Shown here piece after piece: positions 2,532 through 42,429 of a stretch of 64,000 bases of DNA (the first letter of the stretch is position 1; the number at the start of each line of letters is the position of its first letter). This DNA is from Leucoraja ocellata (lineage: Eukaryota): positions 248,001 to 312,000 of the forward strand of contig JAWMAR010001270.1 of the NCBI GenBank assembly GCA_036785375.1, written 5' to 3'. The translations under genes were made by a program, and so were the position numbers. A model generated the notes under the pieces. It searched no databases. It saw only the letters and a list, made by a program, of their open reading frames with translations, and was not told the origin of the DNA.

Positions 2532-2636
2532 GTTCGGCCAGCGTTGTCCTTGTCCTTCGCAATTTAGGAGGTACATTGATCATTCTACTGGTGTTGGCTA
2601 CCTTGAGAATTGTTTTTGGATCAAGCTCTGCCAAAG
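2532..2636 (+). CDS. Receptor gene 1: transmembrane exon with a charged Arg (GSASVVLVLRNLGGTLIILLVLATLRIVFGSSSAK)
   Basis: Acceptor ttttttacgtctgcag ends at 2531; donor AG|gtgaat at 2637; 105 nt, phase 1-1, open; hydrophobic stretch containing Arg, comparable to the NKp30 TM (TVLLLRAGF). Confidence 0.72.
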
Positions 2637-3572
2637 GTGAATGAAGCTTAATTCTAGAGTTCATCTTCAAATTCCCTGTAAAATGGTGCTGCGGAGAATC
2701 AAATGACGCTACGCGAATTGATGCTATTTGGCCACATTGTTAATAACAAGATCGTGAGCCCCAAACGGTACAGAATTATATCAGTTCTCCATCCCCAGAC
2801 TCACAGAGGACAACAATTCCGTCAAGTCTCCGCTATCACCAGTGTTCCAAATTCACTTGTAAAAATCCAAAAACAAAAGAGGGCATTGAAAGAGCTTAAA
2901 AAAATAAATTGTTAATCATCGTTAATATCAAGGAATACAATACCGTCTTCTAATCGAACTGTTATAAAATAATTGTTCCAATGCTGAAACGCCACATGCA
3001 GAATTGGAAGATGAGAGCGGTTGTAATTTAGATGTCGCCACTTGGAGCGGTTTCCTTCCTCAAGTTACAGCTTTGTGCAACTGTTTATCTTGGGCCAATG
3101 CATGTTGGATAAATTGATTATTTCCCAATCCTTTGATTTAAAAGTTGTCGGCACGATTACCGTTCCTTCTTTCATTTTTGTGGTCAGTCGGGACTCCGCT
3201 GAATGTTGTGATTTCTGCATCTGCCCGAATTGGTCCCCATCCCATTGTTTTTGCTTCTGAAGGGTGGAGCCCAGCCGCGGCTGATCCCTGTAAGATGAAG
3301 CGTCGGGAATGTCTTCAAAACTGATGTTCAGATAATTATTCAAAGTATCATTTAGTGGTGACTCTCTCGCCTTGACCTCGAACCCATCTGGAGACAAAGG
3401 CGACAAATCGATTTTAGTCGGGAGCACAAATTGGGCAATAGGGAATCGGCGCCCGTTAGATGTCTTGTCGGCTCATAATAAGAGTGGTGTAAGAAAATAT
3501 GTCAACATTCAAAATAACTCACGATCGCCAAATCTGCACTATAGTACCCAATTAATTTGTCTTCCTGTCTAG

Positions 3573-3668
3573 GCTCCGTGGTAAAGGTTGACCGATTGGT
3601 CGAGACATCAGAGCAAACAATGAACAGAGAGGAACATGGAAAGACCTCCGGGTATGTGATAGAAACGG
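3573..3668 (+). CDS. Receptor gene 1: cytoplasmic exon (GSVVKVDRLVETSEQTMNREEHGKTSGYVIET)
   Basis: Acceptor tttgtcttcctgtctag; donor G|gtaag at 3669; 96 nt, phase 1-1, open in the frame continuing the TM exon. An alternative donor gtatgt exists at 3652. Confidence 0.62.
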
Positions 3669-3739
3669 GTAAGAACGCTAGGGGACTTATCACAATAATT
3701 CAGTTGATATAAACTTTAAATGTTTTGTTTCTTTAACAG

Positions 3740-3759
3740 ATCGTGCTAGAAACGGCTGA
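3740..3759 (+). CDS. Receptor gene 1: last coding exon (DRARNG*)
   Basis: Acceptor tgttttgtttctttaacag after a 71-nt intron; TGA at 3757-3759; AATAAA at 3896-3901. Confidence 0.55.
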
Positions 3760-4419
3760 CTGAATCTAAGCGTATTATACTGAAAATTGCACTATTTACT
3801 CAAAACCGGACCACCGTCTCAGTCTTAAAAGCTGCATTTGGCCGAGTAATTCCAGCTTTGTTCAGGGAGGCGAGTCTTGATTTTACAAAGATCTGAATAA
3901 AATTATGCATCCTGGTGTTGTTGTTGAAAGGCCAGATCCCAATTCCGAATTGATGTCCAGCTCTTCTGTATCCTTCATCAGAAAGAAAATCGCTTCCATC
4001 TGCCATTGAGAGCCTCTTTACATTGCGCGAGGGGCGGGCTCCACCTTGTGGCTTCATCGAAGTACTACAGACTTTGTCAATCCGTTCTGCAATTTAGCAT
4101 CATGTCCTTCTTCCATCTGGGCGGTGCCTCCAGCACCTGAATATTGCGCTCTCCCATCATTCCATAACCTCAGCATGCCTGAGGCTGATGAGTTAAGTCA
4201 CCATGACTCCGATGTCTGCAACCCGCCTGCCTGATAACCACAAACGTTGAATCCAAATTAATCAGTGCAGAATATTTCACAAAGGAAGCAAAGGTTATAA
4301 ACTTAATCCACTGCTCAAAACATATATTGGACAAGTTAATTCCGGACAAATCGTTGTCAATTAATTTTTTTATCAATATGCGAAATTAGATCTGATATAA
4401 AGATACTGGTAACTATTAG

Positions 4420-4787
4420 AAACATAGAAAATAGGTGCAGGAGTAGGCCATTCGACCCTTCGAGCCTGCACTGCCATTCAATATGATCATGACTGATCAT
4501 CCAACTCAGTATCCTGTACCTGCCTTCTCTCCATACCCCCTGATCCCTTTAGCCACAAGGGCCACATCTAACTCCCTCTTAAATATAGCCAATGAACTGG
4601 CCTCAAATACCTTCTGTGGCAGAGAATTCCAGAGATTCACCACTCTGTGTGAAAAATGTTTTTCTCATCTCGGTCCTAAAAGATTTCCCCCTTATCCTTA
4701 AACTGTGACCTCTTGTTCTGGACTTCCCCAACATCGGGAACAATCTTCCTGCATCTAGCCTGTCCAACCTCTTAAGAATTTTGTAAG
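4420..4787 (-). mobile_element. Young 5'-truncated CR1/HER1 3' fragment with 7-bp TSD
   Basis: CTATTAG duplicated at 4413-4419 and 4788-4794; near-identical to the copy at 48950-49371. Confidence 0.85.
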
Positions 4788-4925
4788 CTATTAGTTTGCA
4801 TCTATTTGAATTTGTATATTTTTTTCAGTCCCTTTCTTCCAGAAAGATATATAAATGCAAAACTGGCATAAACTTCAAATGTGGCATGAAATAAACTACG
4901 AGAGTAGAAAAAATAAACTGTCTAT

Positions 4926-5530
4926 ATATAACCATATAACAATTACAGCACAGAAACAGGCCATCTCGACCCTTCTAGTCCGGCTGAACACGTATTCTCC
5001 CCTAGTCCCATATACTTGTGCTCAGACTATAACCCTCCATTCCTTTCCCATCCATATAACTATCCAATTTATTTTTAAATGATAAAAACGAACCTGCCTC
5101 CACCACCTTCACTGGAAGCTCATTCCACACAGCCACCACTCTCTGAATAAAGAAGTTCCCCCTCATGTTACCCCTAAACTTCTGTCCCTTAATTCTCAAG
5201 TCATGCCCCCTTGTTTGAATCTTCCCTACTCTCAGTGGGAAAAGCTTATCCACGTCAACTCTGTCTATCCCTCTCATCATTTTAAAGACCTCTATCGTCC
5301 CCCCTTAACCTTCTGCGCTCCAAAGAATAAAGCCCTAACTTGTTCAACCTTTCTCTGTAACTTAGTTGCTGAAACCTAGGCAACATTCTAGTAAATCTCC
5401 TCTGTACTCTCTCTATTTTGTTGACATCCTTCCTAAAACTAGGCGACCAAAATTGTACACCATACTCCAGAATTGGCCTCACCAATGCCTTGTACAATTT
5501 TAACATTACATCCCAACTTCTATACTCTAT
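4926..5530 (-). mobile_element. CR1 LINE 3' fragment (second subfamily)
   Basis: ORFs LYKALVRPILEYGVQFWSP..KIERVQRRFTRMLP and TRGHDLRIKG..FFIQRVVAVWNELP; near-identical copy at about 38604-38884. Confidence 0.9.
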
Positions 5531-7599
5531 GATCTTGAGTGAAAAGAGTTATGCCTGAAATTTTTTTCAAGTTCAAAGGGTGTAATCTATTATTCACTGG
5601 TGTTTATTAGATCTAATTTTATGCCAGATTTAACTCATTCTAAATTTTAAATTTCTTCCACAAAATGATATCGGCAAGAAATTAATTCTTAGAATATAGT
5701 TTTGAGCAATTAATCGGTTTTAAAGATATTGAGTCTTTATTAAATATGCTCTATCAGTTTGTCTGAATTTATGACAATGATGTAACAGATAAGTTGTAAC
5801 TTAACCATGTTATGCATTGGCATCACTTTTGTAATAGAATCCCTTGATGTTGACCTTTTCAACTGCAAATTAAATGAAATTGGATGGAAATTGAAAACAT
5901 AAACAAGCCATAATCAAATGCAACAAAATGTTTGTAGTTCTCAATGTCAGATTTGTTTAAATCTAAAGGTAAATGAAGTAAAATTCAGGAATTAAATACA
6001 CTTACAAGAATGACCATTTAATAACTAATTAGTTTTTGATTTAGATAGGTATGAGGCGGTACTTTTTAAAAGAATACATAAATTGCTCAGGCAATTTGAA
6101 ATGACTCTCCTCCTGACAGCCTATCCACAATCTAAGAGCATGCCAAAGCTTAACCTACTTGCCTGGATAAATCAAACTCCAAAAACATTGAAGAAGTTCA
6201 ACACCATCCTTGATCAGTTTCCCATCTACCAACCTAATCTGCACCATGGCATCAGGGTCTGGCAACCATCCTAACTTAAAAATATGCTGTTTTTCATCAT
6301 CAGGTTTACTTCTAAATCTGAGTGCTTCCTTCCCAATTGCATTGGGGGAGTTCATTCACATGAAGGAATGCAGTAATTCAAGCCTGTGGATAATGTCCAT
6401 CTTCTCAGGGCAACGTGGTACGGACAATAAATGCTGGATTCGTTGATGTTGCCCACACTCCTGGAAAGATAAACACCAAATAATACCCAGTTATTGGATG
6501 AGTAAGATGTTTGGGAGCATTAATACACAAATCTATGAAGAGAGATTAACGGGGCCATATAAAAAGAACATGGCACCGTTCATTTTTACTCAGAATTGAA
6601 AAGCAGAAAAGAATAAGGTAAGTGGATTGAACTGCAGTACAGTGTACAAAATGAGGCAATTCTTATCCAGAAATAAAACATTGATTCGGGCTGGTCTGTA
6701 TGGATAAACAATGTAATTGAGTGGCCTAATAGAAGTTTTAAGGTTTGACAGAGTAGACGTTTACCCTATCTATTCCCTTCATGATCATATATCTGTATAA
6801 GATCACTCCTCATTCTCCTGCGCTCCAAGGAATAAAGTTCTAACCTGCTCAATCTCCCCAGTCTACTTCTGGCAACATCCTCGTAAATCGTCTCTGCACC
6901 AATAACATTCCCTACAATAGGATGACGAAAACTGAAGACAATATTCCAAATGTGGCCTCACTAATGTCTTGAGCAACTGCAACCTAACTAAGCAACTGTA
7001 ACTGAGGAATTATTTAATTACGGTGTAAAATTGGTAGGTCATCTTCCATGATTTCCCCTTCAAGTGAAAGATCACCACTCCTGGATAGGAAGTAGCTGAA
7101 GGAATTGCAATATATTTCCATCAACGTGGTCCACTGCAGCTATGATGCAACAGTAATGGAGACTATTTATTTTATGTTGGTGAATCGGTACCAATGAGAA
7201 GGGTTTCTTTATCCTGAATAATGTTGTGCTTCTTGAGTATTTTTTAGAGCTAAATGTATCCACGTAAATAATAAATATGCTCCACCGAGTGTCATGAACA
7301 AGAACATGGAAGGAAAAACATAAAATGCAGATAGGTTTTGCCTGGAAGACAGTGGGAGCATAAAGCACTGAAACATGTGAGTAAGCATGTGCTGTTTATG
7401 TGCGCCTTTGGTGTACAATGTACAGTTCTGATCACACCACATCATGATTTATAATTTGATCAGAAGCATAAATAGGACAATAGTCAGTCATTTTCCTTCA
7501 CCAGGAGAGTCTGGAATTAAAGAGCATTGTTTAAGCTGACACAGGATAAATTGAAAGGAGAAATGAGAGACAGTTTTATTTCCATGGTTGTGTGGAATT

Positions 7600-9000
7600 A
7601 ATTTCCAAGGCAGTCAGAAATGTAGCTTTCCACCACTACCACTGTCTACTTTCACCATGCCAATTTTAGATGCAATTAGCCAACAATGTAAGGTGTGTCC
7701 AGTATGTCTTAATCTTCTGAACCAGCCTGCGATGTGAAACCATGTCAAACGTCAAAAAAATGCCTACAATCCCGCCTTGATGAATCTGTTTAGTAGTTGC
7801 CTCATAAAGCTCAATCAAATTAGTGAGGCAGGATTTACCCCCGCACAAAGATCTACTGACTATCCCTAATAAATACCTGAATTATCAAATTTACATAAAT
7901 CATATCTCTTAAGACCTTCCTCATTAATTTCCCTCATTAATGAAGTAAGGCACAACAGTTGTAATTACTTGGCATATCTTTGGTGCTCTTCTTAAGTGAA
8001 AGAATAGTAGTTATCCTTCCCTGTTTTGGCATGTCACCTTTGAAGAATGAAGGTACTGAAACCTCTGCCTGGGCCACATGTATCTCCTGCCTTGCCATCT
8101 TTCCTTTCACCTTAATTGGAACTTGCTGAATCTGAAGTCTGGTTAATTGTCCCTTAAAAGACTTCCACTTGTCAGTTTTACCCACAAGCATCTGTGCCCA
8201 GTCTACATTCATCAATTTCTAGTTATGCTATTGAAACAAGCCTTTCTCAAATTTAAGGAACAGCCTGATCCCTTTGCATAAATAACTTGAACATTTCTGA
8301 ATTTTCACTGTTCTAAAAGTCTCGCTCCACCAACATTTCCACCACCTACCCAGTGCTTTCCTGATAATGTCGAGCATCGTACTGACTCATATCTGACAGG
8401 ACCAATAATATATTGGCTCTCAAAATGTGTGGTACAAACTTAACAAATTTCTCTCCATCTAAACCCGTGACAATCAGGACAATCCAGTTAAGATTGAGCA
8501 TATAAAAATGCCCACTATAACAAACTTTGGCGGCTTGCTTACATACCTGTTCCAGTCATTTTTCCTGACTACTGGGAAGTCTATCTTATAACTTTGGCAA
8601 AGTGATCGTTCCTCTCTTTTTCCCAAATTCGATCCATAAGGCCTCATTGGATGAACCCTCCAGGATACCCTTCCAAAGGGTTAATTATTTTCTGCCTAAC
8701 AGGCAATGCAAACGTACCCCCCTGCTCTTCTGCAGTACTCTTTCTCACACCTGAAGGTTGTATAACTTGGAACATTAAGTTGCCAGTCTTGTCCTTCCCT
8801 CTTCCCTCAACTATGTGATTGCAGTAAAGTCATCATTCCAAGTTCTGACACATGCTCTAATGTCAACTGACTTGTCAGTGAGACACCTTGCATTAAAGTA
8901 AATGCTGTTGAGCCTGCTAAGCCTCCTCGGCTTGCGAACCTGCCACCCTCTACTCTGCCCTTGGGACTTGCTTGATTTGTCCTGCACAAATTTCACCTCA
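7600..9000 (-). mobile_element. Old degenerate CR1 LINE fragments (endonuclease/RT)
   Basis: KSCLTNLIE..FDMVSHRRLVQKIK and LNSIYFNAR..AIT motifs; boundaries approximate. Confidence 0.7.
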
Positions 9001-11218
9001 GTTGTTGCATTGGTTCCATGCTTCCACCGATCTTCTCCCTTCCCATGTTTGTTTAAACACTTCTAAGTAGCTTGAATAATCCTCTCTTCTCTGATCTTCG
9101 TTCCCTTCCAGTTTAGATCAATCAATGTTTCCTATACAGATCCCACGCATGAATCCTGAGATAGGACTCATGAAGTAATTTTTTTTAAACATTTGTGGAA
9201 CTCCCTAAACTCACTTTGCAAGACCTTTATCTTCCCGTAAAGCACGTTCTGTGTATTTTCTTTAAATGGTTTGAAGATGTTGTGTCAATGAAAGTTGGTG
9301 TTTTCTGAGAAAACATCGCAGTAAAACGTATACGTTTAAATAAATGTGTGTATGTGTGTATCTAAATCTGTGCATGCGTGCGTGCTTATCAGCCTTCTTT
9401 TCAATTTATTCTCGTCCTTTGTAAATGTCTATTTTTGCTTCTTGTTCCATTGCGATTGGAAAGGGTACGTCCTCTGGAAGGAAATTTAAAAAAGACTAAC
9501 AGTGCTGGAGTAACTCTGTGGATCAGATGTGTAGGTGAAGTTTCGAGTCGAGACCTCTCTTCAAACTTCAGCTTTCTGTATGTAATTCGCTGTAGCCAGA
9601 GCACGCACATTTGCAACTTCTCTATAAAAAGATGATATAGCCAATGAACCCCCATAAATACATTCATAGCTCGAACTAAGAGTAAGTAACCCATAAGAAT
9701 AATGCACCTTGAATCTGCTGGTGACATCATGGAAACTCGTTGTGGTCAAAGTGTACGATGATCTGAAGTTGCAAACTGCTTGCGGTATCCAATTTGACGC
9801 TGAAGTGGAAGAAGTCTAATTTGAGTAATTTATTTGAGACCCTGTTTCTGATACCAAAATATTTGCTCTGCGAGTTTTATGTTTGGTAATTGCGCGCTGT
9901 GTACATTCTGGAAAAAAGAAATACGAAACAATTATCTTGATATCAATTCAAAACAAGTTTTAAAGTTGCCAATCTTTCTATTGCAACGTAGAAGGACAAA
10001 CCACTTATTGTTTCATTGGCAATCATTATAAAATTGATAACTGGATAAATATCATGCCATTCCCCTGTATTGTCGGTTACGACAAGAGAGGGGCATTTCA
10101 AAACACTGAAGTAATTTCAGCTGAAAACAAATCTGAAATAATTTGTTGGTTAATATGCTTGCAAGAAGAGATGAGCCGCTTAACAAAGAAAACAACTAGT
10201 GAAACACGAGGGAACACGTGTTTTAAATCTGCTTTTGGTCCCAGAGCACTTTATTGTTATCGAACATGTTGTCATTACTGTAAACAGTAGAGGGTTGAAT
10301 TAACAAGTTTACAAAGCTTCGCATCCAGATAGGGTAATAAAACGAAATGGAAAAAAAGCCAAATCTACATCTTCCCCTAAATAAGACAAAACGTTCATAT
10401 TTTTGACAGAATCAAGTCAGGTTTGACGGAATCAAGTGTATCCCTGGAAGAGTTTCGGGAACTAAGGAGTAAGCTAAAAAAATGAAATTGCAAGGGCAAA
10501 AAGGGGACAGGAATTATCCCTGGCAGATAGCATTAAGGATAATCCCAATAGATTTTATAAGTACATCAAGGGAAAAAGGGGGGACCAGAGCGTGTGGGAT
10601 CCATAAGGAATCAAAGGGTTAACTCTGGTAGAGCCACATGAGATGGGCAATGTCCTCAATGAGTATTTCTATTTTTTTAGCCATGGAGAAAGACAGGAGA
10701 ACTGAGGAACTTGGGACAGTCACTGGAAGTATCTTGAGAGCAGTCAATATTATGGTTGAAGAGGTGCTGGATATCGTGAAGCGTATGAAGGTAGACAAAT
10801 CTCCCAGGCCTGAGCACATATATCCGAGGACTCTGGGAAGCTAGAGAGAAAATTGCAGGACCCTGGCGGAGATTTATGAATCGTCAAGGTGTCCAAAGAC
10901 TAGAGGGTGGCAAATGTTGTGCTTTATTCAAGAAGGGTGGCAGGGAAAAGGCTGGGAACTACAGGCGAGTGAGCTTATCATCCGTGGTTGGTAAATTGCT
11001 GGAGATTATTCTGAGGGATAGGATAGAAATGCATCTAGATGGACGTGGGATGATTAGCGAAAGTCAACATTGTATAGGCAGTGAAGATGGTTATCAAAAA
11101 ATTACAGCAGGATCTTGATCAGTTGGTCAAGTGGGCTGAAAAATGGTTGATGGAATTTAATATAAATGCGGGGTGGTACATTTTGGGAAGACTAACATGG
11201 GCAAGACCTACATAGTGC

Positions 11219-11747
11219 AAGAGTAAGAGTAAGAGTAAGAGTATATTTAATTGTCATTTGGACCCCTGGAGGTCCAAATGAAATGCCGTTTCTGCAGCCA
11301 TACATTACACACAAATAGACCCCAGACACAACATAATTACATTTTACATAAACATCCATCACATAGCTGTGATGGAAGGCCAAATAAACTTATCTCTCCA
11401 CTGCACTCTCTCCCCCCCCGATGTCAGAGTCAAAGTCAAAGCCCCCGGCTGGCGATGGCGATTGTCCCGCGGCCATTAAAGCCACGCCGGGTGGTGCGAG
11501 GTCGCACACCGGGTCTTGATGTTGGAGCCCCCGGTGTGCGCTCGCAAAGTCCCGCATTCCAAGCCGCGCGGGGCAGTGGTGTTAGGCCCCGCTCCAGGAG
11601 CTCTTCGACCCCGCAACTCGGGCGGGAGAAGTCGCCGTTGCAGGAGCCCCGAAAAGCGGTCTCCCCCCAGGGAGCCACGGGCTCCCGGCGCCGCCGTCCG
11701 CAGGCATGCAGCAGCAGCCTCCGACTCAGCAGCAGCAGCAGCAGCGG

Positions 11748-11781
<34 letters not shown>

Positions 11782-19299: not shown

Positions 19300-19354
19300 A
19301 TGACAGTGGAAGCATCATTTCGGTACATGGCCCTTCTGGTGACAGTTTGGCAAG
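19300..19354 (+). CDS. Receptor gene 2 exon 1: leader peptide (MTVEASFRYMALLVTVWQ)
   Basis: ATG at 19300; donor AAG|gtact; 55 nt, phase 1, typical IgSF leader exon about 200 nt before the V exon. Confidence 0.72.
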
Positions 19355-19555: not shown

Positions 19556-19864
19556 CAGCCAACGAAGTAACTACGACCAAAGTGGACCAATTCCCGAAAG
19601 AGCTGACAGTCCACAGAGGAGGCAATGCGTCCATGTTCTGCACGTTCTCAATACAACAAGTTACTCCTGATGTTTCCTGGTGGAGATGGGGAGAGAAGAC
19701 ACTTATAGAACCAGACAGCAGAAAAATAATTTCTACCAGAAAGGGCATTGGGGATTTTGTTCTCCTGAATGCAAATATAGCGGACTCCGGGGTTTATTAT
19801 TGTAAAGTGAAAGGTCAGCAGCAATCTATCGGAGCTGGAGCTGGCTCCAGGCTGACTGTAATTG
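19556..19864 (+). CDS. Receptor gene 2 exon 2: VJ-type Ig V domain (NCR3/NKp30- or SIRP-like)
   Basis: VDQFP..GGNASMFC..VSWWR..DSGVYYC..GAGAGSRLTV; acceptor ttcag (NAGNAG), donor G|gtaagt; 309 nt, phase 1-1. Confidence 0.93.
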
Positions 19865-22025: not shown

Positions 22026-22316
22026 CTCCGCCAACTCCCCTGAGCATTAGCCAAGTTAATGGCAGTTCGCCGCCAAAACTTGTGTGTCAAACGGCTGCCT
22101 TTTCCCCGAAGGAAGTCAAAATATCCTGGCAAAGAAATGGTGTAACAATTTCCACCGGGGAGGAACCTGTGAACATCAGTAGCGTGGGGGGGTTGTATGT
22201 GGCTTCCAGTTTTCTCGAAGTAACAAAGCCTACCTGGCGCGTTGATATTTACACCTGCAAAGTGTCACATGTCTCCCTTGCGGTCCCCGCCAGAGTCGAC
22301 TACACCGTCAAGCCAG
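22026..22316 (+). CDS. Receptor gene 2 exon 3: Ig C1-set domain
   Basis: APPTPLSI..KLVCQTAAFSPKEVKISWQRNG..YVASSFLEV..YTCKVSHVSL; acceptor ttctgttacag, donor AG|gtaaga; 291 nt, phase 1-1. Confidence 0.93.
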
Positions 22317-24322
22317 GTAAGACTGGCAAACAGAACTGGGAACAGAGGGAGACCTCCGATCCGATTTAGAAATTATATCTGGCCGAATACTGTACGTGGA
22401 GTAGTAAATGTTAACCTATTTATTCACAGTAGAATATCGATGTGCAAGCCACCTAATGCATCATTTAGCGCTATATTTTCTCAATTAGAACTGCGACGAT
22501 TAATTGATACGTTTAATGTATATTGTGCGTGTGAAACAGCAAACTTTCAGGCACTTGACAGTGGTGTAGCAAGCACACATTCAACTCTCGACTACAAAGT
22601 GACATAATATGACGAATGGGGAAGGAGAATGCTCTGAACAAGGCATATTTTCTTTAAGACAGGAAGTCGGCTTTTAACGTTTGTATTGAGGCGATAAATT
22701 TCACTTCCCAGAGATGCGTGAATCTTTGTAATTCCGTACCTCGGAACATCGCAGATCCATAATGTTGTATTTCAGAGCTGAGATAAATAGTTTTTGAAAA
22801 TGATGATCAAGGGCAACAGGTGCATAGGAACGCGCCATCTCCTGCAAATTCCCTTCCGAGTCACAAACCATCATGACTTGTAAATAAATCGGCCGTATCG
22901 TCGCTTGGATTTGATCCTGGAACTCCCTACCCAATAACACTGTGGAATTATCTTCGAGAGGACTGCAGTGATTCACAAAGGCTGCTCACTGCCACATTGT
23001 GAAGGACAAGTATGAATTGGGAATACTGTATGTGCTGGCCTTGTCAGTTTTACCCGGATCATTTGTGTTTTAAAATCAAAAGGTATGAACAATGGGCAAG
23101 AAATGGATTCTAATTGAGGAACGACCACAATCGTGCACCCGGAGAGGTCATCTGGCCTTATTCTCTAGTCCTTATAAGTTTACCAACATGAAATGTCACT
23201 GTATTCGTCTAGTTGTATTCAAATGTAATTATTCTATCCGTTTACTGCCCATGATGCCACCAACTACCCACACTATGCCCCTCCATGCCCTTCTGGCTTA
23301 TAATCTCACCTTAAATGTTCTACCATTTCTACCAAGTATCATGTCACCTCCATATGGACGGGAACGGTTTGAATAGATATGTGCCAGGAGCAGGTAAGTA
23401 GGAGGCAAAGGAGATTGCTTTTTAAATGTTTCCAGCATCTGCAAAGTTCTGGAGATACTTAGCATCTCAGGTAGCTTGTGCGGAGGGTATCTGAAGAAGG
23501 GTCACTACTCGAAACGTAATTTCCCTCCAGCAATGCAACTAAGCCTGTTGGGTTCCTACGGCAGGCAGCTGGGACTACCTCGGTTGGGCAACGTGCTCGG
23601 CATGGGTGAGTGGCGGAATGACCGGTTTTCGTGCTATGACTCTCCTAATTTCTCATAATCTGCGATTTGGAGGCAAATCTTGTTGGAAGGCCTGCCTGTT
23701 TCTTGAAATATTTGAACACGTTAAAGGCTTGCAATCCCGCATGTAAAGGTAAATTGCTTTTGTTACACCTTAAAAGCTGTAGAATCAGGTGCTATATGCC
23801 GTCCTAAAATATGGAATCTGCTAAGAAAAAAGCAAGTCTCACTTTATATTTCATAAGTAACTTTCATGCACAGAGAGAAGCTCACTGGATCATTATGTGA
23901 CACGGTTTACGTGTTTACCATACATCTGTGTTGGAAGGAACTGCAAATGATGGTTTACACCGAAAATGGGCATGAAATGCTGGTGTAACAGCAGGTCAAG
24001 CAGCATCATCGAAGAGAAGGAATGGGTGACGTTTCCTGTCAAGACACCTCTTCAGACTGAGAGTCAGTGGAGAGGGAAACTAGAGATATGGAAGGTTACA
24101 AAGAGATGTCAGATCTGAAAATGACAGATCAAAGCAGACGATATATATTTATTCGCTAACTTGCAAATAATGCAATTCGTTCCATTCGGTATATATTGGA
24201 ATGCTTGTACACCAAGGATAAAAAGACACATTCGGAGTGCTCTGCCTTCCTGACTCCTAATTTCTCACCAGTTTCTTAGTTTATCTGTTTTACAGTTTTA
24301 AATGTATCTGCTTCTCCTGCAG

Positions 24323-24421
24323 ACTCTAATCTCGCACTGATTCCCGGATGTGTAGTGGGCGTATTGGCAATTTTAATCCCGATTATAATTTTGATAGTAC
24401 TCAGAATAAAGGCAACAAATG
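24323..24421 (+). CDS. Receptor gene 2 exon 4: uncharged TM (DSNLALIPGCVVGVLAILIPIIILIVLRIKATN)
   Basis: Acceptor cttctcctgcag, donor G|gtaaga; 99 nt, phase 1-1; hydrophobic run followed by RIK stop-transfer. Confidence 0.88.
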
Positions 24422-24527
24422 GTAAGACCGTTATTTATTTTTGCCAATTGCTTTAATATCCTAACAGTATTTCAGAAAACAGGAACAGTAAATTAATAAA
24501 TGTTGAGTGCAGAAGAAGAAACATTGC

Positions 24528-24571
24528 AGGTGATCATTAGGTGATCATTAGGTGATCATTAGGTCATCATT
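24528..24571. repeat. 11-bp tandem repeat (AGGTGATCATT)x4
   Basis: Three exact copies and one with a single mismatch. Confidence 0.9.
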
Positions 24572-25041
24572 CACATAACAAAAACATTATGACAGTTAAC
24601 TATTGAAATGTGCTGGAACATTTTTTTTTTCAAAGTTCGAATTAGTCGCTCATCGACTGCGTCTTTATTTCACAATCAAGAGGAATTGTTCATACATTGC
24701 ATTTTATTCTTTAAAAATATTGAATCTTAAGAAATTTGATATGGACCTTGACTTTGTTTGTGATCAACCTGCTCTAACTTGCCACACTTTTAATTTTCAT
24801 TGTAATTTTGGAATGCGACACAGCTGCTGACACGCTATCACCATTTGATAATTTAATTCAAAGTCATGTTCGATTACGTATTACCGACTATGCGAAGTTA
24901 ATACACTAACACAAGATTGCAAAAACCGCTATTGCTAAACGGTTTCAAATACAACGGCGCCATCAGGAGTTCTTACTTTAGCCAATACATTTAATTATCT
25001 TCAAAGACACAATATTCATTTTGTTGTCTTGTTTTCTTTAG

Positions 25042-25085
25042 ATGCTAATAAAAATTCGATGGAATCAAGTCGAAGTGCAGAAACG
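25042..25085 (+). CDS. Receptor gene 2 exon 5: cytoplasmic spacer (DANKNSMESSRSAET)
   Basis: Strong polypyrimidine acceptor ttgttttctttag; donor ACG|gtaggg; phase 1-0, matching the phase-0 last exon. Confidence 0.75.
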
Positions 25086-25617
25086 GTAGGGTGCAATGTT
25101 CTTAGTATTGCAATTTTTTTTTCAAAAATGTTTTTTAGCAAAGATTTTAATTTCGTTGAGTAAAATCTAGAATTATTGTGGTACAGTGGAAGCTGTCCTG
25201 TTTATATCAACCTTGCATTTTCGAGTAATTACCAATCCTTATTTTCAATTTCAAAGAATGATCTCCAAATCATTAACGTTAAGCAGCTGTCACAGTGTGA
25301 AATTCTGGTTATTCTGTAGGAATGTTAAAAAAAACTTGTATGGTGAGAAAGTAGTAATTATTATGCAGCTGGACAGTTGCGCACAGAACAGGAATGTATC
25401 AAGCACTTAAGGGGCAGGCTATGTTGAAATATCATAATCATACTTTATTAGCCAAGTATGTTTTACAACATACGAGGAATTTGATTTGCCACACAGTCAT
25501 ATCAATAAAAAGCACCAAACACACAAAATACATCTACCACAGTGACTCCCCCACATTCCTCACTGTGATGGAAGGCAAAACTTACATATTGCAAGGGAAG
25601 AGTACAAATGTGTAGGA

Positions 25618-26435
25618 TCAAAGTCTGCGAGCGGGGCCACAACCTCTGCCATGCGACATGAATGAATGGTTTGCTCTAGTCAGTTCAGCTTTCCGAAACA
25701 GTTCAGCTCTTAGCTTGCGGTCGCTCATTCCCCCCACAATCTTGTCGCGTACTAACTCATTAGTCAACTCACCGAAGCGGCACCGTGTAGCCATATGTCG
25801 CAAGTCACTGATGAAGCGTTTGTCAGGTTCATCGATCTGCTGCTGTCGGGCAAAAAAACCTTGTTTTCTCAAGGATGCGATTCGAGGGCAGGTAACATAA
25901 CTCTAAAATTTTCTGAGTAGGACGGTTGGATTGTCGATAGATTCTGCTGGCACAAGGACCTGGCCATTATCGTTGGGGAAAACTCGAAGTTGGCTGCACG
26001 AAGCATTGCTTCTGGACCCGCTACATTGAGCAGTAGCGATGCCTTCAGATCATCGGGGTCATGTAGTGAGCATAATCACGTTCAAACATGCGCCATCGTT
26101 CATCTATGTCAGTAAAACACAATGGGACTCGGTTTTCGACAGGAGTTGGCCATAACGTTGAAAAATCACGAAATAAAACTGATAAAGAAAATAAACAGCG
26201 GTAAACGAACGTAGTGGGTTAGACCCAATAACCATGTAATTACCCGACTCGCACTCAGATAAAGGTATAAGCATCTTTAATATCCATTCCAGTATCACAT
26301 ATGCAGTACATTGTACATTCATTCTGCTGCAACTACTGAATACAGTAAGCGAGTTCTTACACCATAAAGCATGCACTAGGCAGAGTTATTATTACTAAGC
26401 ATTCTGATTGGCTAACATCCAATAGTCAATCTACA
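25618..26435 (-). mobile_element. Gypsy LTR retrotransposon 5' part: LTR (26235-26435), PBS-like TGG, degenerate gag
   Basis: On the - strand TGTAG...ATTAAA...TTACA is followed by TGGTTATTGG; gag-like FFARQQ..FISDLRHMATRCRFGELTNELVRDKIVGG. Confidence 0.78.
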
Positions 26436-27149
26436 ACCCCCATTGCCCAATCTACACCATATCCCTTATACCTATCTCCATTCCCCACCAGGAAGGTCTC
26501 AGGCCATTCCCAATCTTTTTATGGAGATCCAATCAGTTCCCCTCAACTAACACTTTCCTCCATCTGGCAGAATACGGCTTCAGCTTTAACAACTACTCTT
26601 GACTCCTCTCACTTTCTTTAAGTCAAAGGTATAGCCTTGTATCTTTGTTTATATTTAGAATTGACACCCTGTGCAAGTGTACAAACAGCATGGGTGCGAT
26701 TCCCCCGTTGATGGATTGCTTTCACAATTTGTCACCACGGACACCTTTCCATTTCTAGGCCTGGTTTTCAAAGTGATTGTTCTCAAACATGACTTACAAA
26801 TTAGATTTTTGGATTCAAGTTTCTTGGTGCGGTGGATCACTTCTGAGGCAGAGGTGACCTGTGCAATAGGGATGGTTGCACCTGAACTGGTTGGAACCAA
26901 TATCGAGGCAGTTCCCGAGGCAGGTTCTGTCCTGGGCCTCCTCCTAGCTTCCAGACCCCCCTCTCTACAATCAGTCTGAAGAAGGGTCCTGGACCGAAAC
27001 GGCACCTATCCGTTTTCTGCTAAAATGCTGCCTGTCCCACTGAGATACTGCAGCATTTTGTGTCTGTCTCAGGTTGTGCTAATACTACATGGGTGGATTT
27101 AAGTTAGATTGGCGGGGGGGGGGGGGGGGGGGGGAGGGAGATCCAATAC

Positions 27150-29460
27150 AGGACTGAGGCAGGTGAGAAACAGATGCTGAGAGAATGTTTAGAGGAGAGA
27201 ATAGGCAGGAGCATGGCAAGGAGTGAGGAAAGACTATTGGATTGAATTGCATTTATTTTAATGCGAGAGGTCTATAGGTAATGTGTAGCGGGTACGTGTG
27301 ACTGGGACATTGTAGCCATTACAGAAACCTGGCTAAGAAAGGGACAGGGTACAGATGTTATAAGAGAGAGAGGTAGGAGTAAGAGGAAGTAGTGTTGCTT
27401 TATTTAAGGAGAACTTCATGGAAGTAGTCCGAGATGACATTACTGATCGTCGTTCAGTGAGGTTATATGGGTGGAAATATGAAATTGTTGTTGGGAGCGT
27501 TCTTTAGACCTCCAAATAATCAACAGGAATTTAGAAGAGCAAATATGCCAGGAGATTGCAGGCATCTTCAAGACTAATGTTGTCAAATCTGGGATTTTCA
27601 TATTCTCAATATAGACTGGGATCGTCATAACACCTAGAGCTTAGACGGAATGGAAATTGTCAAATATGGTCAGGAAAGTTACCTTAGACAATATGTAGGA
27701 GAGGGCAAAGCTTGATCTACCCAAAGGCAATTGGAAAGGAAAGTGACTGATGTGTTCATAGATTACCCTTTTGGGACCAGTGCTCTGTTCTATTAACTTT
27801 AAAATAGTTATGGATAAAGACAGGGTGGACCCATTAGTTCAAATTCTGAATTTGGGCAAGGCCAACTTTTAAGGTGTTAGACAGGAATTTGCTAAATTTA
27901 ATTCAAGTAGGTTGTTTGTGGGCAAAGGAACATTCAGAAAGTGAGGAAAAATTTAAAAATTAAGAAAAGTTCAGGGCATGCATGTCCTGTTAAAGTGAAG
28001 TCAAGGCAGATGACCGTAAAAAAATCTTGGACTAGAGAAATTGACATTCTGGTCTGGTCAGGAAAAAGGTCAGGTCTAGGCAGATGTAAGTGTATCAGGA
28101 ACTAATTTTCAGGAACATACTTAGAAAGGAAATCAGGAGGCCAACAGGTGGTCAAGAGGAAACGCTTGCAAATAATATTAAGGTAAATCCAGATTTTATA
28201 AAATATTAGGCAAAAGAAGGTAACTAGAGAGTATAGGGCCCCACAGAAACCAAAGTGGTCATCTCTGCGTGGAGCGGCAGGAGATGGGCAAGGTACTCAA
28301 CGAGTATTTCTCCTCTGTTTTTAACATGGAGGCAGACATGAAGACTGGGAACTTGGGACAGTTAATGAAAATGTCTTGACAGCCCACATTACGATCGAGG
28401 AGGTGCTGAATGTCCTGAGGTGTATGAATGTAGAATAATCTACCAGACCTGATCAGATATATCAGAGGACACTGTGGGAAGTTAGAGAAGAAATAGCATC
28501 TGGGCTGAGGTAAACAAATCATCATTAAACAGGTCTGAGCTGCAGAAAATGTTTGGATTTATTTCCCGACATGCAATACCTCACACTTATCTGCACATGC
28601 CTAACTGATCAAGATCCTGCTGTAATATTTGATGACCATCTTCATTATCTACTTTACCACTGACTTAATGTCATCTGCAAGCTTACCAAAAAAATCTTCT
28701 ATATTCTGGCCCTAATCATTGACATGCAACACAAACGGCAATGAATCCAGCACCAATCCCCGAGGCACACCCTTACTCCCAGGCCTCCAGACATTCCTTG
28801 CTGGAGACAGAGGAACTTGGAACAATAATAGAAATCTCGAGGACAGTATGTATTATGTAAGAGGAGCATACACAAAAAGCTGGAGTAACTCAGTGGGACA
28901 GGCATCATCTCTGGAGAAAAGGAATGGGTGCCGTTTCGGGGTCGAGACACTTCTTTAGACCCTTCTTCCTCATGGTTGAGGAGGTACTGAATGTCATTGC
29001 AAAGAAAATCTTAGGAACTATAGATCAGTGAGCCAAATATCTGTGGTAGGCAAATTACTGGAGAGAAACATTAGATTGCATAGGATCCAGGGAGTACTGG
29101 AAAGAATTGGCTTCATGGAAGGAAGCAGAGGTGATGGCGAAAGGTTGTTTGTCTGACTGGAGGCCCGTGACTAGTGTTATGCCTCAGGGATCAGTGCTGG
29201 GCCCATTGCTATTTGTGGTTTGTATCAATGATTTGAATGAGAATGTACAAGGCATGGTTAATAAGTTTGCAGGTGACACTAAAGTGGGTGGTATCGTAGA
29301 TAACGCAGATATTTGATCAGTTGGGGAAATGGGCTGAGAGATTGTTAATGTTAAATGCAGATAAGCACAAGGTGTTGCATTTTGGGAAATCAAACCAGGA
29401 CAAGACCCACACAGTGAAAGGCAGGGTCCTGGGAAGTGTTGTGGAGCAAAGGGATCTAAT
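27150..29460 (+). mobile_element. Degenerate CR1 LINE pieces, with an inverted piece at about 28560-28800
   Basis: Endonuclease-like start (VAITETWL) and WRPVTSVMPQGSVLGPLLF..FAGDTKVGG; boundaries approximate. Confidence 0.8.
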
Positions 29461-31862
29461 ATTGTAGGTACCCAAAATTGCTGGAGAAACTTAGCGGGTG
29501 CAGCAGCATCTATGGAGCTAAGGAAATAGGCGACGTTTCGGGCCGAAACCCTTCTTCAGATTGATGGGGGGTGGGGGGAGAAGGAAGGAAAAAGGGAGGA
29601 GGAGGAGCCCGAGGGCAGGGGGGGGGGGGGGGGGGGGGGGGGGGAGATGGGAGGAGACAACTTGAGGGTTAAGGAAGGGGAGGAGACAGGAAGGGCTAGC
29701 AAAATTGGGAGAATTCCTTGAAAGTGGTGTCACAGATAGAGTGGTCAGATGACTTTTGGTATGTTGGCCTTCATCAGTCAGGGAATGAGTCCACATGCAG
29801 CTTAGATTATTCACCAACTGACTCTTTCCATGGTAAAGGTCCATGGTGCAAGGACATCGCCCTCACTTTTGATCCCAGTTTCAATCTAACAAATACTCTT
29901 AGCTGTGTGGGCTGATTTCTGCCAAGGTGCAACCAAATTGTCCTCGCCCCGATCCGCAATATGACCAAGGCTGCAAATTTTTTTTAGTTTAGTGATGCAG
30001 TGCTGAAACAAGCTCGTCGGCCAACTGAGTCGCACAGACCAGCGATCCCCGTACATTAACATTATTCTGCACACACTAGGGACAATTTACATTTTACCAA
30101 GCCGATTAACCTACAAACTAATACGTCTTGAGTGTGGGATGAAACCGAAATTCTAGGAGAAAACCCACACGTCACGTGGAGAACGTACAAACTCCAGACA
30201 GGCAAGCACCCAGGGTCCAAGGTCAGGATCCAACCCGGGTCTCTGGCACTAAGGCAGCACCAATCTTTGGGCAGCACCTCTATTGCTGCACCACTGTGTG
30301 AATAGGGTAAATATTAGTCAAACCCTCAATCAGTGATCAGAAACAAATATCTCAACAGGGGACTTTGCATAATCTTGTACCCTGATGTTTGAGCACTACT
30401 CGAATTTATCAACCATTCTTAGTCTTAGAATCCAAAAACTCAGACCAATTAGATTTCTTTATATAAAAAAGGATATTCATCTGGTTGGCCTATACTCTAC
30501 CGCTACATCAGAGAATCTGGTGCTTCTGTACCTATGAACTTGCGACTGCATTGTCACAGGACAATGAGTACTGTAGAAGCTGTACTTTGTCCAGGCGCAG
30601 CCACTCAACACTGAGATGCGGGGATCATGAATGCATCCTGCAACGAATGGGCTCAACAGCTGAAAATGGGGCTGCTTCATTGGTTGAGAGGGGCCCCGTC
30701 TCATCAGCACATCTAAGATCACAAAAGAATCTTGATGAACTGGGACAATGGGCCGAGGAATGGCACATGGAGTTTAATGCAGAAGTTTTACATTGGCAAG
30801 CCAAACTTGGACAGGGCTAATACAATAAATGGTAGGCCCTGGGGAGTGCTGTAGAACAGAAAGACCTAGAAGTACATAGTTCCATGAATATGGTGATGCA
30901 GGTAGACAGGGTGCTGAAGAAAATATTTGGCATGCATGTCTTCATGAGTCAGGTTGAGTACAGGAGTTGGGGCATGTTATTGCTGGCTAAGATGTTGGTA
31001 CGGTCACATTGAGTACTGTGTACAGTTCTGGGGTGAAAATACAGCTATTCACCAGGATAGGGAGAATGGGGTTAAGGTGAGAGAGGGATATTAAAGGGGC
31101 CTTTGGAGCAACTTTTTCACCAAAAGGGTGATTCGCGAGCAGCCAGAGGAAGTGCGAGGCAAGTACAATTACAATATACAAGACACTTGGACAGGTTCAC
31201 GGCTCGATAAGGTATGATACATACATACTTGGGCCACAAAGCGACTTCCATCACAATTAGCAGGAGGTGAGGGAGGATTTGTAGGGCGCCCGCCCAGCTG
31301 CTTTTCTGTAGCAATGACCTGCACTCACTGGATGTCTCACTGTATCTTGCATAACAGCACACTGTATGACACTCGCCTCCCTGTTCGCCCCATCCCACCC
31401 GATAGCAGCACACAGACAGCCATCGAATATTTAAAATGGCTCCTTCCACATGGGCTAGTCTGCTACTGGGTCACTGACTTTTGCATCGCCTGGTGTGCCA
31501 GAGGCGAGTCGTGTCCATAACCAGGAACCCGGCCCTGCAAGCCTGGTTGTAACAGGCCATGTATAAACACAACTTGCTTTCTGGGAAGGAACACCGAACG
31601 CTAGTTGAACGCCGAACTAATGTATTAGCATACTGAAAAAGTAGTACTTTAAACCTTTACCTACACTTCCTAGGAGATTACACTAGCAATAACCTAGTAT
31701 GAACATTAAGTGCAAAAATAAATATTGCTTTATAAATACAATTAAAAATTGGAGTAAGAAAAAATACTTAAAGTAGCTATCTTATACTAATCAATGATCG
31801 ATATTTGAAAACAAAATCTATTCATGTATTTACTAACATCCGATATTTAATGACTTTCACAG

Positions 31863-31988
31863 ACTAAAGGAAGCGAAGCTGACAAGCCTACTTACGCTGC
31901 TCTGCAGTTTTCCAAATCAATTAAATCAGCACCTAAACCCAAGAACGAACACCCAGTCTACGCAGATATAAATATTTCAAAGGGGTAA
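31863..31988 (+). CDS. Receptor gene 2 exon 6: tail with two ITIM-like motifs (TKGSEADKPTYAALQFSKSIKSAPKPKNEHPVYADINISKG*)
   Basis: TACTAAC branch point at 31831-31837; acceptor ctttcacag; phase 0; TAA at 31986-31988. Spliced CDS totals 924 nt = 307 aa. Confidence 0.82.
   Translation, partial: TKGSEADKPTYAALQFSKSIKSAPKPKNEHPVYADINISKG

Positions 31989-42168: not shown

Positions 42169-42429
<261 letters not shown>

What the first reader, a model, noticed from the sequence alone, without database searches (positions are those of the whole stretch)
2532..31988. Candidate paired activating/inhibitory immunoreceptor locus hidden in small exons
Seen: two tandem, same-strand type I membrane receptor genes. 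The upstream one has an Arg at the N-terminal end of its TM (VVLVLRNLGG) and a short tail lacking YxxL/I. The downstream one has an uncharged TM and a tail with two ITIM-like motifs. Established: that contrast is the signature of paired receptor families (SIRPa/SIRPb, KIR, LILR, teleost NITR). Inference: this is the edge of a paired-receptor cluster in a cartilaginous fish. The ectodomain of gene 1 lies outside the window, so paralogy between the two genes is not shown here.
Basis: partly seen in the sequence, partly recalled or inferred. Interest (0 to 1): 0.85.

Follow-up and report, generated by a model that had tools for sequence, protein, structure and literature searches.

The report
Cartilaginous-fish SIRP-like receptor gene locus
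A real gene for an antibody-like cell-surface receptor of cartilaginous fish lies here, from a family that exists in 'brake' and 'accelerator' versions, but the proposed 'accelerator' partner beside it rests on one small unproven exon.

Summary
Gene 2 is real. It has six + strand exons (19300-31988): leader, V with a J-like motif, one C1, TM and two tail exons. All have canonical splice sites, and the Ig and TM exons are phase 1. They match a multigene family annotated in at least 12 chondrichthyan species as SIRP-alpha-like, B7-H6-like or tapasin-related.

The tail carries the family's terminal two-tyrosine module. Both tyrosines have Pro at Y-2; 21 of 22 relatives have Leu at the first and none has Pro. 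It is therefore not a canonical ITIM.

The family does include Arg-in-TM, short-tail forms. In Mobula birostris such a form and an ITIM form share 205 of 218 leader-plus-ectodomain residues.

Gene 1 is one exon-like TM ORF (2532-2636). Its size, phase, splice sites and Arg position fit. It has no significant homology, no RNA support and no excess conservation in a related species. Its ectodomain lies outside the window.

Verdict: observation partly confirmed, interpretation partly supported. This is a new member of a known kind. The scan noted similar VJ-C1/ITIM genes on other pieces of this genome.

The parts
19300..19354 (+). gene 2 leader exon (ATG at 19300; donor GT at 19355; phase 1)
   Evidence: DNA read. 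The peptide resembles family leaders (alignment). 2 of the 53 family queries hit it by tblastn.
19556..19864 (+). gene 2 V exon with an in-frame J-like G-x-G...LTV motif; Cys-to-Cys span only 55 residues; phase 1-1
   Evidence: Pfam I-set 8.6e-9 and V-set 6.5e-8. Up to 60% identity to family V domains. 49 tblastn hits from 53 family queries. The two J-motif Gly are kept in at least 90% of 22 rows.
22026..22316 (+). gene 2 C1 exon, the only C-type exon between V and TM; phase 1-1
   Evidence: Pfam C1-set 2e-14. Up to 58% identity to family C1 domains. 53 tblastn hits from 53 queries. Best PDB matches are Ig heavy-chain C domains, with UrIg2 at 4.4e-17.
24296..24421 (+). gene 2 TM exon, uncharged TM with a conserved Cys; a second in-frame acceptor at 24323 would give a 99-nt exon; ends in phase 1 with G
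   Evidence: DNA. HMM built from the TM regions of 49 relatives: E 1.1e-7, rank 1 of 2164 six-frame segments.
25042..25085 (+). gene 2 short cytoplasmic exon (44 nt)
   Evidence: DNA. The frame is continuous with the TM exon and the last exon. 1 family tblastn hit. Same position and size as the short exon implied by Mobula birostris P0162.
31863..31988 (+). gene 2 last coding exon with two tyrosine motifs (both Pro at Y-2), 16 residues apart; stop at 31986-31988
   Evidence: DNA. 49-57% identity to family tails, E down to 5e-10. 10 tblastn hits. Motif comparison.
2532..2636 (+). candidate TM exon of 'gene 1' (105 nt, phase 1-1, Arg at TM position 6); unproven
   Evidence: DNA. One of 3 exon-like TM windows among 16. 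Family TM HMM gives E 14. No RNA evidence. Three substitutions in the related organism B, all amino-acid changing, with the ORF and splice sites kept.
   Evidence: AG/GT borders seen. No homology found. One amino-acid-changing substitution in organism B. If the donor at 2636 is not used, the ORF stops two codons later.
42169..42429 (-). NUDT21 (CPSF5) exon; the gene that bounds the receptor locus downstream
   Evidence: Pfam NUDIX_2 2.6e-23. PDB CPSF5 at 8.6e-40, residues 19-86.

Best explanation
The window holds one solid gene (gene 2, 19300-31988, + strand). It encodes a non-rearranging, type I Ig-superfamily receptor built as leader, short V domain with a germline J-like motif, one C1 domain, an uncharged TM and a short tail ending in a two-tyrosine module. 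It belongs to a multigene family of cartilaginous fishes that public pipelines label SIRP-alpha-like, B7-H6-like or tapasin-related. In relatives the module is a canonical ITIM followed 15-17 residues later, in all but one mis-registered tail, by a second YxxV/L/I motif, often ITSM-like. By inference, phosphorylation by Src-family kinases would recruit SH2 phosphatases and damp cell activation. The family also has forms with an Arg in the outer part of the TM and a short tail. By analogy with FcR-gamma- or DAP12-coupled receptors these would signal through an acidic-TM ITAM adaptor. The family is therefore a paired inhibitory/activating system. In this copy both tyrosines have Pro at Y-2, so its inhibitory strength is uncertain. 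The exon at 2532-2636 is most likely, at roughly even odds, the TM exon of an Arg-TM paralogue whose Ig exons lie upstream of the window. Gene 2 is the last family member before NUDT21. Shown: gene 2's structure, its family membership, and the paired forms in relatives. Inferred: all signalling steps and the reality of gene 1.
For: Gene 2: exon borders and phases come from the DNA. Pfam confirms the V/I-set and C1-set domains. Exhaustive phmmer with the V exon found single-domain relatives of 39-60% identity among 1.84 billion representatives. The 10 I looked up are all chondrichthyan V-C1 proteins. A profile search gave 48 proteins at E<=1e-10; 46 are named and all of those are chondrichthyan. 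tblastn with 53 family proteins hit the C1 exon 53 times, the V exon 49 times, the last exon 10 times, the leader twice and the short tail exon once. The family TM HMM hits gene 2's TM at E 1.1e-7. Paired nature: 8 Arg-TM rows of 53 are scattered over the C1 tree, needing 7 changes. Mobula birostris P0165 (Arg-TM) and P0162 (ITIM) lie on one contig and share 205 of 218 residues before the TM. Gene 1: the splice sites, phase 1-1 and 105-nt size match the roughly 99-nt TM exon implied for gene 2 and its relatives. MAFFT put its Arg in the same column as the Arg of P0153, P0128 and P0137. It is one of only 3 exon-like TM windows in six frames. Its score against the Arg-TM set was reached by 20 (maximum) and 6 (mean) of 2000 shuffles.
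Against: Gene 1: the family TM HMM gives E 14. Without the composition correction it gives E 0.11, in a different register. The Arg-TM-only HMM ranks it 10th. Against 24 random TM-like ORFs of the same window it ranks second or third and is not separated from them (43 against 42 and 41). The exon-like filter was designed after seeing the exon. No listed run is on record as RNA, and the two small possible-RNA runs laid nothing. In related organism B the exon changed at about the flank rate (3 of 105 against 37 of 1362 listed). Those three changes, in two codons, are all amino-acid changing: L to N and L to V. No V, C1 or tail exon lies in 1-19300. Gene 2: Pro at both Y-2 positions, against 0 of 22 relatives' tails. 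Its C1 sits on a long branch, 0.69 against a median of 0.12. It lacks the extra tyrosine exons that many relatives have. These points are compatible with relaxed constraint.
Confidence: 0.55

Rival explanations
1. Only gene 2 is real. The 2532-2636 ORF is a chance hydrophobic ORF with fortuitous AG and GT borders, and the window contains no activating partner.
For: No significant homology. Scores are no better than the best random TM-like ORFs. There is no RNA evidence. The substitution rate in organism B equals that of the flanks, and all changes alter the amino acid. A poly-Leu low-complexity ORF also passes the same exon-like filter. The 2 kb upstream of the exon is LINE-derived, with no Ig exon.
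Against: Only 3 of 16 TM-like windows pass the splice and phase filter, and one of them is the true TM exon. The exon's size, its phase, its terminal split Gly codon and its Arg position fit the family. It lies on the same strand 17 kb upstream of a family member, and the family is multi-copy on single contigs in other species.
Confidence: 0.3
2. The 2532-2636 exon is real but belongs to an unrelated type I membrane gene, or is a decayed relic of a former family member, so the two genes are not a functional pair.
For: Homology to family TMs is not demonstrable. There is no DNA-level similarity between 2300-4000 and gene 2's TM region. The exon lacks the Asp-His that follows the TM in 4 shark Arg-TM forms. 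Evolution against organism B looks neutral.
Against: Phase 1-1 exons of about 100 nt ending in a split Gly codon are the family's TM-exon format. The batoid Arg-TM forms P0165 and P0172 also lack Asp-His, and they share the Arg...LGG...RI pattern with one gap.
Confidence: 0.15
3. Gene 2 is itself a degenerating or functionally shifted copy: an intact reading frame that no longer works as an SHP-recruiting inhibitory receptor. This can be true alongside any of the other readings.
For: Pro stands at Y-2 of both motifs, where 21 of 22 relatives have Leu at the first and none has Pro at either. The family's FYP in C1 is FSP here. The C1 branch is long. There are no middle tyrosine exons.
Against: All six exons are open with canonical splice sites. 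The canonical Cys, Trp and Cys residues are kept. The long branch may only reflect the lack of a close species in the database. Mobula birostris P0162 has the same short exon set.
Confidence: 0.25

Closest known systems
Unnamed chondrichthyan V-C1 receptor family, auto-annotated as 'tyrosine-protein phosphatase non-receptor type substrate 1-like', 'NCR3LG1-like' or 'tapasin-related protein-like' (for example Mobula birostris XP_ entries behind P0162 and P0165, and Heterodontus francisci P0151)
   Same: Same exon set and order. The V domain has the J-like GxG, and C1 starts with PPTPL. The TM has a conserved Cys and a GG. The terminal module is xTYAAL, then 15-17 residues, then xxYADV/I in all but one mis-registered tail.
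   Different: Identity is only up to 60% in V and up to 58% in C1. Pro stands at both Y-2 positions. C1 has FSP where the family has FYP. No protein from the window's own species turned up in the searches.
SIRP family (SIRP-alpha inhibitory, SIRP-beta activating through DAP12)
   Same: A V domain with a J-like motif is followed by a C1-set domain. There are ITIM-tailed and basic-TM paired forms. The family profile hits SIRP-alpha 2wng at 8.2e-26 and SIRP-gamma 4i2x at 5.4e-21. SIRP clusters are the nearest named clusters in the ESM Atlas for relative P0151, at 0.96.
   Different: There is one C1 domain where SIRP has two. The basic residue is an Arg near the outer end of the TM; by recall, SIRP-beta has a central Lys. 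The tail has a single two-tyrosine module; by recall, SIRP-alpha has four tyrosines. The C1 exon alone puts Ig heavy-chain C domains and UrIg2 ahead, and no SIRP is in its best 60.
UrIg2 / UrIg, non-rearranging antigen-receptor-like genes of elasmobranchs (PMC12227049; abstract, section 7 and term searches read)
   Same: UrIg2 is the best solved-structure match of the family profile: 9dmx_A, 1.7e-33, one alignment across V and C1. Both have a single-exon VJ and a split leader, and neither rearranges.
   Different: Per section 7 of the paper, UrIg2 has 9-11 C domains and UrIg has no TM. The words ITIM, SIRP, inhibitory and tyrosine do not occur in the paper's text. The genomic context also differs: UrIg2 lies in the IgH/TCR complex and UrIg in the MHC, whereas this gene lies next to NUDT21.
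PRARP genes of birds, reptiles, amphibians and bony fish (Fu et al. 2019, J Immunol; known to me only from recall and from its citation in PMC10751288)
   Same: By recall: non-rearranging VJ plus one C1 plus a TM plus an ITIM-bearing tail, which is the same architecture.
   Different: Not testable here. Neither the paper nor any PRARP sequence was available.

Membership tests
Chondrichthyan V-C1 'SIRP-alpha-like' multigene family | Leader, V (J-like GxG), one C1, TM and tail exon order, with sequence similarity in every exon | tested here: met
   Identity is V up to 60%, C1 up to 58% and last exon up to 57%. The TM HMM gives E 1.1e-7.
Chondrichthyan V-C1 'SIRP-alpha-like' multigene family | Terminal module: LTYAAL-type ITIM, then 15-17 residues, then a second YxxV/L/I | tested here: inconclusive
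   The module and its spacing (16 residues) are present. Y-2 is Pro at both motifs, whereas 21 of 22 relatives have Leu at the first and 0 of 22 have Pro.
Paired activating/inhibitory Ig-like receptors (as a kind) | Two linked genes with closely similar ectodomains and opposite signalling parts | not testable with these tools
   Gene 1's ectodomain is outside the window, and 1-2531 holds no Ig exon. The feature is met in a relative: P0165 and P0162 share 205 of 218 residues.
Paired activating/inhibitory Ig-like receptors (as a kind) | The inhibitory member carries a consensus ITIM (S/I/V/L)xYxx(I/V/L) | tested here: not met
   The motifs have Pro at Y-2.
Paired activating/inhibitory Ig-like receptors (as a kind) | The activating member has a basic TM residue and a short tail without tyrosine motifs | tested here: inconclusive
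   The ORF 2532-2636 has Arg at TM position 6, and no Tyr motif follows in either tail model. That the exon is real is unproven.
Paired activating/inhibitory Ig-like receptors (as a kind) | Association with an ITAM adaptor (activating form) and with SHP-1/2 (inhibitory form) | not testable with these tools
   This needs co-expression and binding experiments.
SIRP family | V-C1-C1 ectodomain | tested here: not met
   There is one C1 exon between V and TM and no other C-type exon in the window.
SIRP family | Closest sequence relatives are SIRPs | tested here: inconclusive
   With the profile, UrIg2 (1.7e-33), IgA1 heavy chain, titin, CT3 and a Fab fragment all rank ahead of SIRP-alpha (8.2e-26). 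The C1 exon alone has no SIRP in its best 60. The Atlas features of P0151 point to SIRP clusters.
UrIg/UrIg2 | VJ followed by several C1-type domains (9-11 in UrIg2) | tested here: not met
   There is a single C1 exon. The feature is taken from PMC12227049, section 7.
NITR (teleost) | V domain followed by an I/C2-type domain or none (recalled definition) | tested here: not met
   The second domain is C1-set at 2e-14.
PRARP | Orthology to chicken PRARP-A/B | not testable with these tools
   The paper is not held, and no PRARP sequence was returned by any tool.

The most novel reading that the evidence does not exclude
Cartilaginous fishes carry a large, so far undescribed family of non-rearranging VJ-C1 receptors that are wired as inhibitory (ITIM/ITSM) and Arg-TM activating pairs. 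Their nearest solved relative is UrIg2. If so, signalling-competent relatives of the antigen-receptor precursor survive as an innate paired-receptor system, and this locus next to NUDT21 is one inhibitory/activating gene pair of it.
Probability: 0.3. Interest if true: 0.75.

Novelty: new member of a known kind. Interest (0 to 1): 0.5.

Why it matters
Paired Ig-like receptors are well studied in mammals, birds and teleosts. I found no paper describing a V-C1 paired family in cartilaginous fishes, the oldest jawed vertebrates with adaptive immunity (searches, over a library that lacks most subscription journals). The family's best solved-structure match is UrIg2, a gene discussed as a relic of the antigen-receptor precursor. 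A signalling, single-C1 relative with inhibitory and Arg-TM forms would therefore bear on what such precursors did before RAG invasion. For this window the practical result is smaller: one un-annotated but well supported receptor gene, with unusual Pro-substituted tyrosine motifs, and one candidate partner exon that needs upstream sequence or RNA to settle.

Tried and rejected
1. Paralogy inside the window. blastn of 2300-4000 and tblastn of each exon peptide against the whole window found no second V, C1, TM or tail copy. tblastn with 53 family proteins found nothing convincing outside gene 2. The only low E-values came from a LINE-derived, mis-annotated N-terminus of P0128.

2. Minus-strand 135-aa ORF at 3068-3472, inside gene 1's putative intron. 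It has no Pfam family. Organism B has a 2-nt insertion at 3139, which breaks the frame. Rejected as coding.

3. Extra tyrosine-bearing tail exons between 25085 and 31863. tblastn with nine relatives' tails found only the last exon.

4. A weak V-like match at 37500-37577 is flanked by stops. Rejected.

5. RNA test. No listed run is on record as RNA. Two tiny possible-RNA runs laid no contig.

The name rests on recall only.

9. PRARP and UrIg (2023) papers: not held.

10. The statement that all hits are chondrichthyan is limited. One search scored only the 8000 candidates that share the most words, and one search scored 973. Absence from other vertebrates is therefore not shown.

11. Supplements of papers were not asked for. 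Tables S1 and S3 and fig. S1 of PMC12227049 might list related VJ-C1 genes.
Full report
**What is in the sequence: gene 2**

Reading the DNA gives six + strand exons with canonical AG/GT borders:
- leader, 19300-19354
- V, 19556-19864
- C1, 22026-22316
- TM, 24296-24421, with a second in-frame acceptor at 24323
- a 44-nt tail exon, 25042-25085
- last exon, 31863-31988, including the stop

The leader ends in phase 1, and the V, C1 and TM exons are all phase 1, as is usual for Ig-superfamily genes. The frame runs through all joins.

Pfam scores the V exon as I-set 8.6e-9 and V-set 6.5e-8, and the C1 exon as C1-set 2e-14. The V domain is short, with 55 residues from Cys to Cys, and ends in a J-like G-x-G...LTV motif.

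Against solved structures the V exon mostly hits I-set domains. A shark VNAR is the only V-type match (2.2e-5). The C1 exon hits Ig heavy-chain constant domains first, and UrIg2 at 4.4e-17.

A crude Cys-Trp-Cys scan listed 15 matches in six frames. I tested only the two at 19639 and 22085 with Pfam. tblastn found no other Ig exon.

**The family**

An exhaustive phmmer search with the V exon against 1.84 billion cluster representatives gave 513 proteins at E<=0.001. Giant multi-Ig proteins head the list because their scores sum over domains. The single-stretch matches of 39-60% identity are proteins of 130-420 residues.

I looked up 10 of them. All are chondrichthyan V-C1 proteins, from Heterodontus, Mobula, Narcine, Scyliorhinus, Chiloscyllium, Mustelus and Heptranchias. 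They are auto-named SIRP-alpha-like, NCR3LG1-like, tapasin-related or uncharacterized.

A profile of 11 relatives plus the five window exon rows found 48 proteins at E<=1e-10. Of these, 46 are named and all are chondrichthyan, including Callorhinchus, Hypanus, Hemitrygon and Pristis. Many lie on one chromosome-size contig per species. That search scored only the 8000 candidates sharing the most words, so absence from other vertebrates is not shown.

The window's exons reach at most 60% (V), 58% (C1) and 57% (last exon) identity to these proteins. No protein of the window's own species turned up.

In a C1-domain tree of 54 rows, the window's C1 sits inside a well supported clade (SH-aLRT 98). 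All named rows of that clade are batoid (Pristis, Mobula, Hypanus, Hemitrygon). It lies there on a long branch, 0.69 against a median of 0.12. I infer that the source is a batoid or a lineage near them.

**The tail**

The last exon aligns with the family's terminal module. Among 22 distinct relatives' tails:
- The first motif has Leu at Y-2 in 21; the remaining one is a mis-registered match.
- The spacing between the motifs is 17 residues in 19 tails, 15 or 16 in two, and 24 in the mis-registered one.
- The second motif has Thr (10), Ala (8), Leu (2), Val (1) or Ser (1) at Y-2.
- None has Pro at either position.

The window has Pro at both positions and a spacing of 16. "ITIM-like" is fair, but the consensus is not met.

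Many relatives have further tyrosine exons between the TM and the last exon. The window has none. Its exon set matches the short Mobula birostris form P0162.

**Is the family paired?**

Yes, in relatives. Of the 53 family rows in the C1 tree, 8 have an Arg in the outer part of the TM and a short tail:
- P0153 (Scyliorhinus)
- P0137 (Chiloscyllium)
- P0128 and P0196 (Heterodontus)
- P0176 (Heptranchias)
- P0165 and P0172 (Mobula)
- P0185 (Mustelus)

Four shark forms also have Asp-His at the inner end of the TM. P0137 ends in a YDAL motif, so not every Arg-TM form is free of tyrosine motifs.

The Arg-TM label needs 7 changes on the tree, no fewer than shuffled labels need. The forms therefore arose or switched repeatedly, or some are isoforms.

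In Mobula birostris, P0165 (Arg-TM) and P0162 (ITIM tail) are encoded on the same 86.2-Mb contig. They are identical at 205 of 218 residues up to the end of C1, and then diverge. This is the classic paired-receptor signature.

**Gene 1**

It has a good acceptor and donor and is phase 1-1 and 105 nt long, ending in a split Gly codon like the family's TM exons.

Points in its favour:
- MAFFT placed its Arg in the column of the Arg of P0153, P0128 and P0137.
- A Smith-Waterman alignment to Mobula P0165 matches Arg...LGG...Arg-Ile with one gap, scoring 43.
- Of 16 strongly hydrophobic 21-residue windows in six frames, only 3 have a phase-1 acceptor with a pyrimidine tract and a phase-1 donor nearby. 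These are gene 2's TM, this exon and a poly-Leu repeat. I designed that filter after seeing the exon.
- Shuffles of the peptide reached its maximum score against the Arg-TM set in 20 of 2000 and its mean score in 6 of 2000.

Points against:
- An HMM of 49 relatives' TM regions scores it E 14, against 1.1e-7 for gene 2's TM.
- Without the composition correction it ranks second of 2164 segments, but at E 0.11 and in another register. An Arg-TM-only HMM ranks it 10th.
- Compared with 24 random TM-like ORFs of the same window, it ranks second or third with no gap to the next: 43 against 42 and 41.

Homology is therefore not demonstrable.

**RNA and conservation for gene 1**

No listed run is on record as RNA. 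The two small possible-RNA runs of the species laid nothing.

A related organism B, which holds about 30% of the sampled words, has one contig across 2207-4400. Within the exon it differs at 2549, 2550 and 2564, giving L to N and L to V. The ORF and both splice sites are kept.

That is 3 changes in 105 bases, against 37 listed in the other 1362 bases of 2328-3794, so the exon shows no excess conservation. The table showed 40 of 90 differing places, so the counts may be incomplete.

The proposed next exon (3573-3651) has no support of any kind. If the donor at 2636 is not used, the ORF ends two codons later. Either way the tail would be short and free of tyrosine motifs.

No V, C1 or tail exon lies in 1-19300, and 1-2030 is LINE-derived.

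I put the chance that this is the TM exon of an Arg-TM family member at about one half.

**Context**

Downstream of gene 2, on the minus strand, lies NUDT21/CPSF5. Its exon at 42169-42429 scores NUDIX_2 2.6e-23 and PDB CPSF5 8.6e-40.

A + strand ORF starting at 51774 looks to me like the first exon of AMFR. That rests on recall only, since searches gave nothing.

Gene 2 is thus the last receptor gene on this side, which fits "edge of a cluster" if there is a cluster. The rest of the window is LINE and retroelement debris and low-complexity GC-rich tracts.

Other first-stage notes report similar VJ-C1/ITIM genes on other pieces of this genome. I did not test them.

**Comparison with known families**

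The family profile's best solved match is UrIg2 V-C1-C2-C3 (9dmx_A, 1.7e-33). SIRP-alpha (2wng, 8.2e-26) and SIRP-gamma (4i2x, 5.4e-21) rank lower. ESM Atlas features of relative P0151 point to SIRP clusters at 0.96.

By its defining features the gene is not a SIRP, because it has one C1 where SIRP has two. It is not UrIg/UrIg2 either, because it lacks their several C domains (section 7 of PMC12227049). That paper does not use the words ITIM, SIRP, inhibitory or tyrosine.

From recall, the PRARP genes of birds to bony fish have the same VJ-C1-TM-ITIM architecture. PMC10751288 cites them as MHC-linked VJ genes. Neither the PRARP paper nor any PRARP sequence was available, so this is the main untested candidate for the same family.

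Five literature searches found no description of this chondrichthyan family. For those searches I saw listings and abstracts only. The library lacks most subscription journals.

**How it most likely works**

Everything in this section is inferred from what is established for ITIM receptors and for basic-TM receptors.
- Family members with LTYAAL-type tails would be phosphorylated on ligand engagement and recruit SH2-domain phosphatases.
- Arg-TM members would pair through the TM charge with an acidic-TM ITAM adaptor. An Arg near the outer leaflet is, by recall, the position typical of FcR-gamma-coupled receptors.
- Near-identical ectodomains would let the two forms compete for one ligand.
- For this copy, the Pro substitutions make weak or altered SH2 recruitment a real possibility.

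**Limits**

No RNA data exist for the species in the runs served. I did not build or search a joined spliced protein; exons were handled one by one.

Noticed in passing
window 3068-3472 (- strand): A 135-aa open reading frame lies inside gene 1's putative intron. It has no Pfam family. Related organism B has a 2-nt insertion at 3139 that breaks it, so it is probably not coding.
   Followed up: yes
window 42169-42429 (- strand): An exon of NUDT21/CPSF5 (residues about 19-86) lies here, tail to tail with gene 2. The receptor gene therefore sits next to a conserved housekeeping gene. No known immune gene cluster was recognised in the window.
   Followed up: partly
window 51774-52043 (+ strand): An ORF starting with Met in a GC-rich island looks, from recall only, like the first exon of AMFR (gp78), head to head with NUDT21. 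There was no PDB hit, and the Atlas was closed to new sequences.
   Followed up: partly
window 24296 and 24323: There are two good, in-frame 3' splice sites 27 nt apart in front of gene 2's TM exon. The downstream one gives the 99-nt exon size seen in relatives. They may be used alternatively.
   Followed up: no
window 24525-24565: A short tandem repeat (an 11-nt unit, about three copies) lies in the intron after the TM exon.
   Followed up: no
window 1-2030, 5005-5548 (-), 10600-12500, 16600-18300 (-), 28900-31000, 47700-50000, 61400-62400: These stretches hold LINE-type reverse-transcriptase fragments and an integrase-like retroelement ORF (48593-49015). One LINE fragment fills the 2 kb directly upstream of gene 1's candidate exon.
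   Followed up: no
window 11250-12100 and 13800-15050: These are GC-rich, low-complexity tracts with long ORFs in several frames on both strands (poly-Ala, Gln, Pro, Gly and Arg). One poly-Leu frame passes the exon-like TM filter by chance.
   Followed up: no
proteins P0137, P0153, P0176, P0128 (relatives, not the window): The shark Arg-TM forms carry both an Arg near the outer end of the TM and Asp-His at its inner end. P0137 also ends in a YDAL motif. This mix of features does not fit a simple activating form.
   Followed up: no
protein P0157 (Chiloscyllium plagiosum) and P0163 (Callorhinchus milii): Some family members have duplicated C1, or duplicated V-C1 units, so domain number varies within the family.
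   Followed up: no
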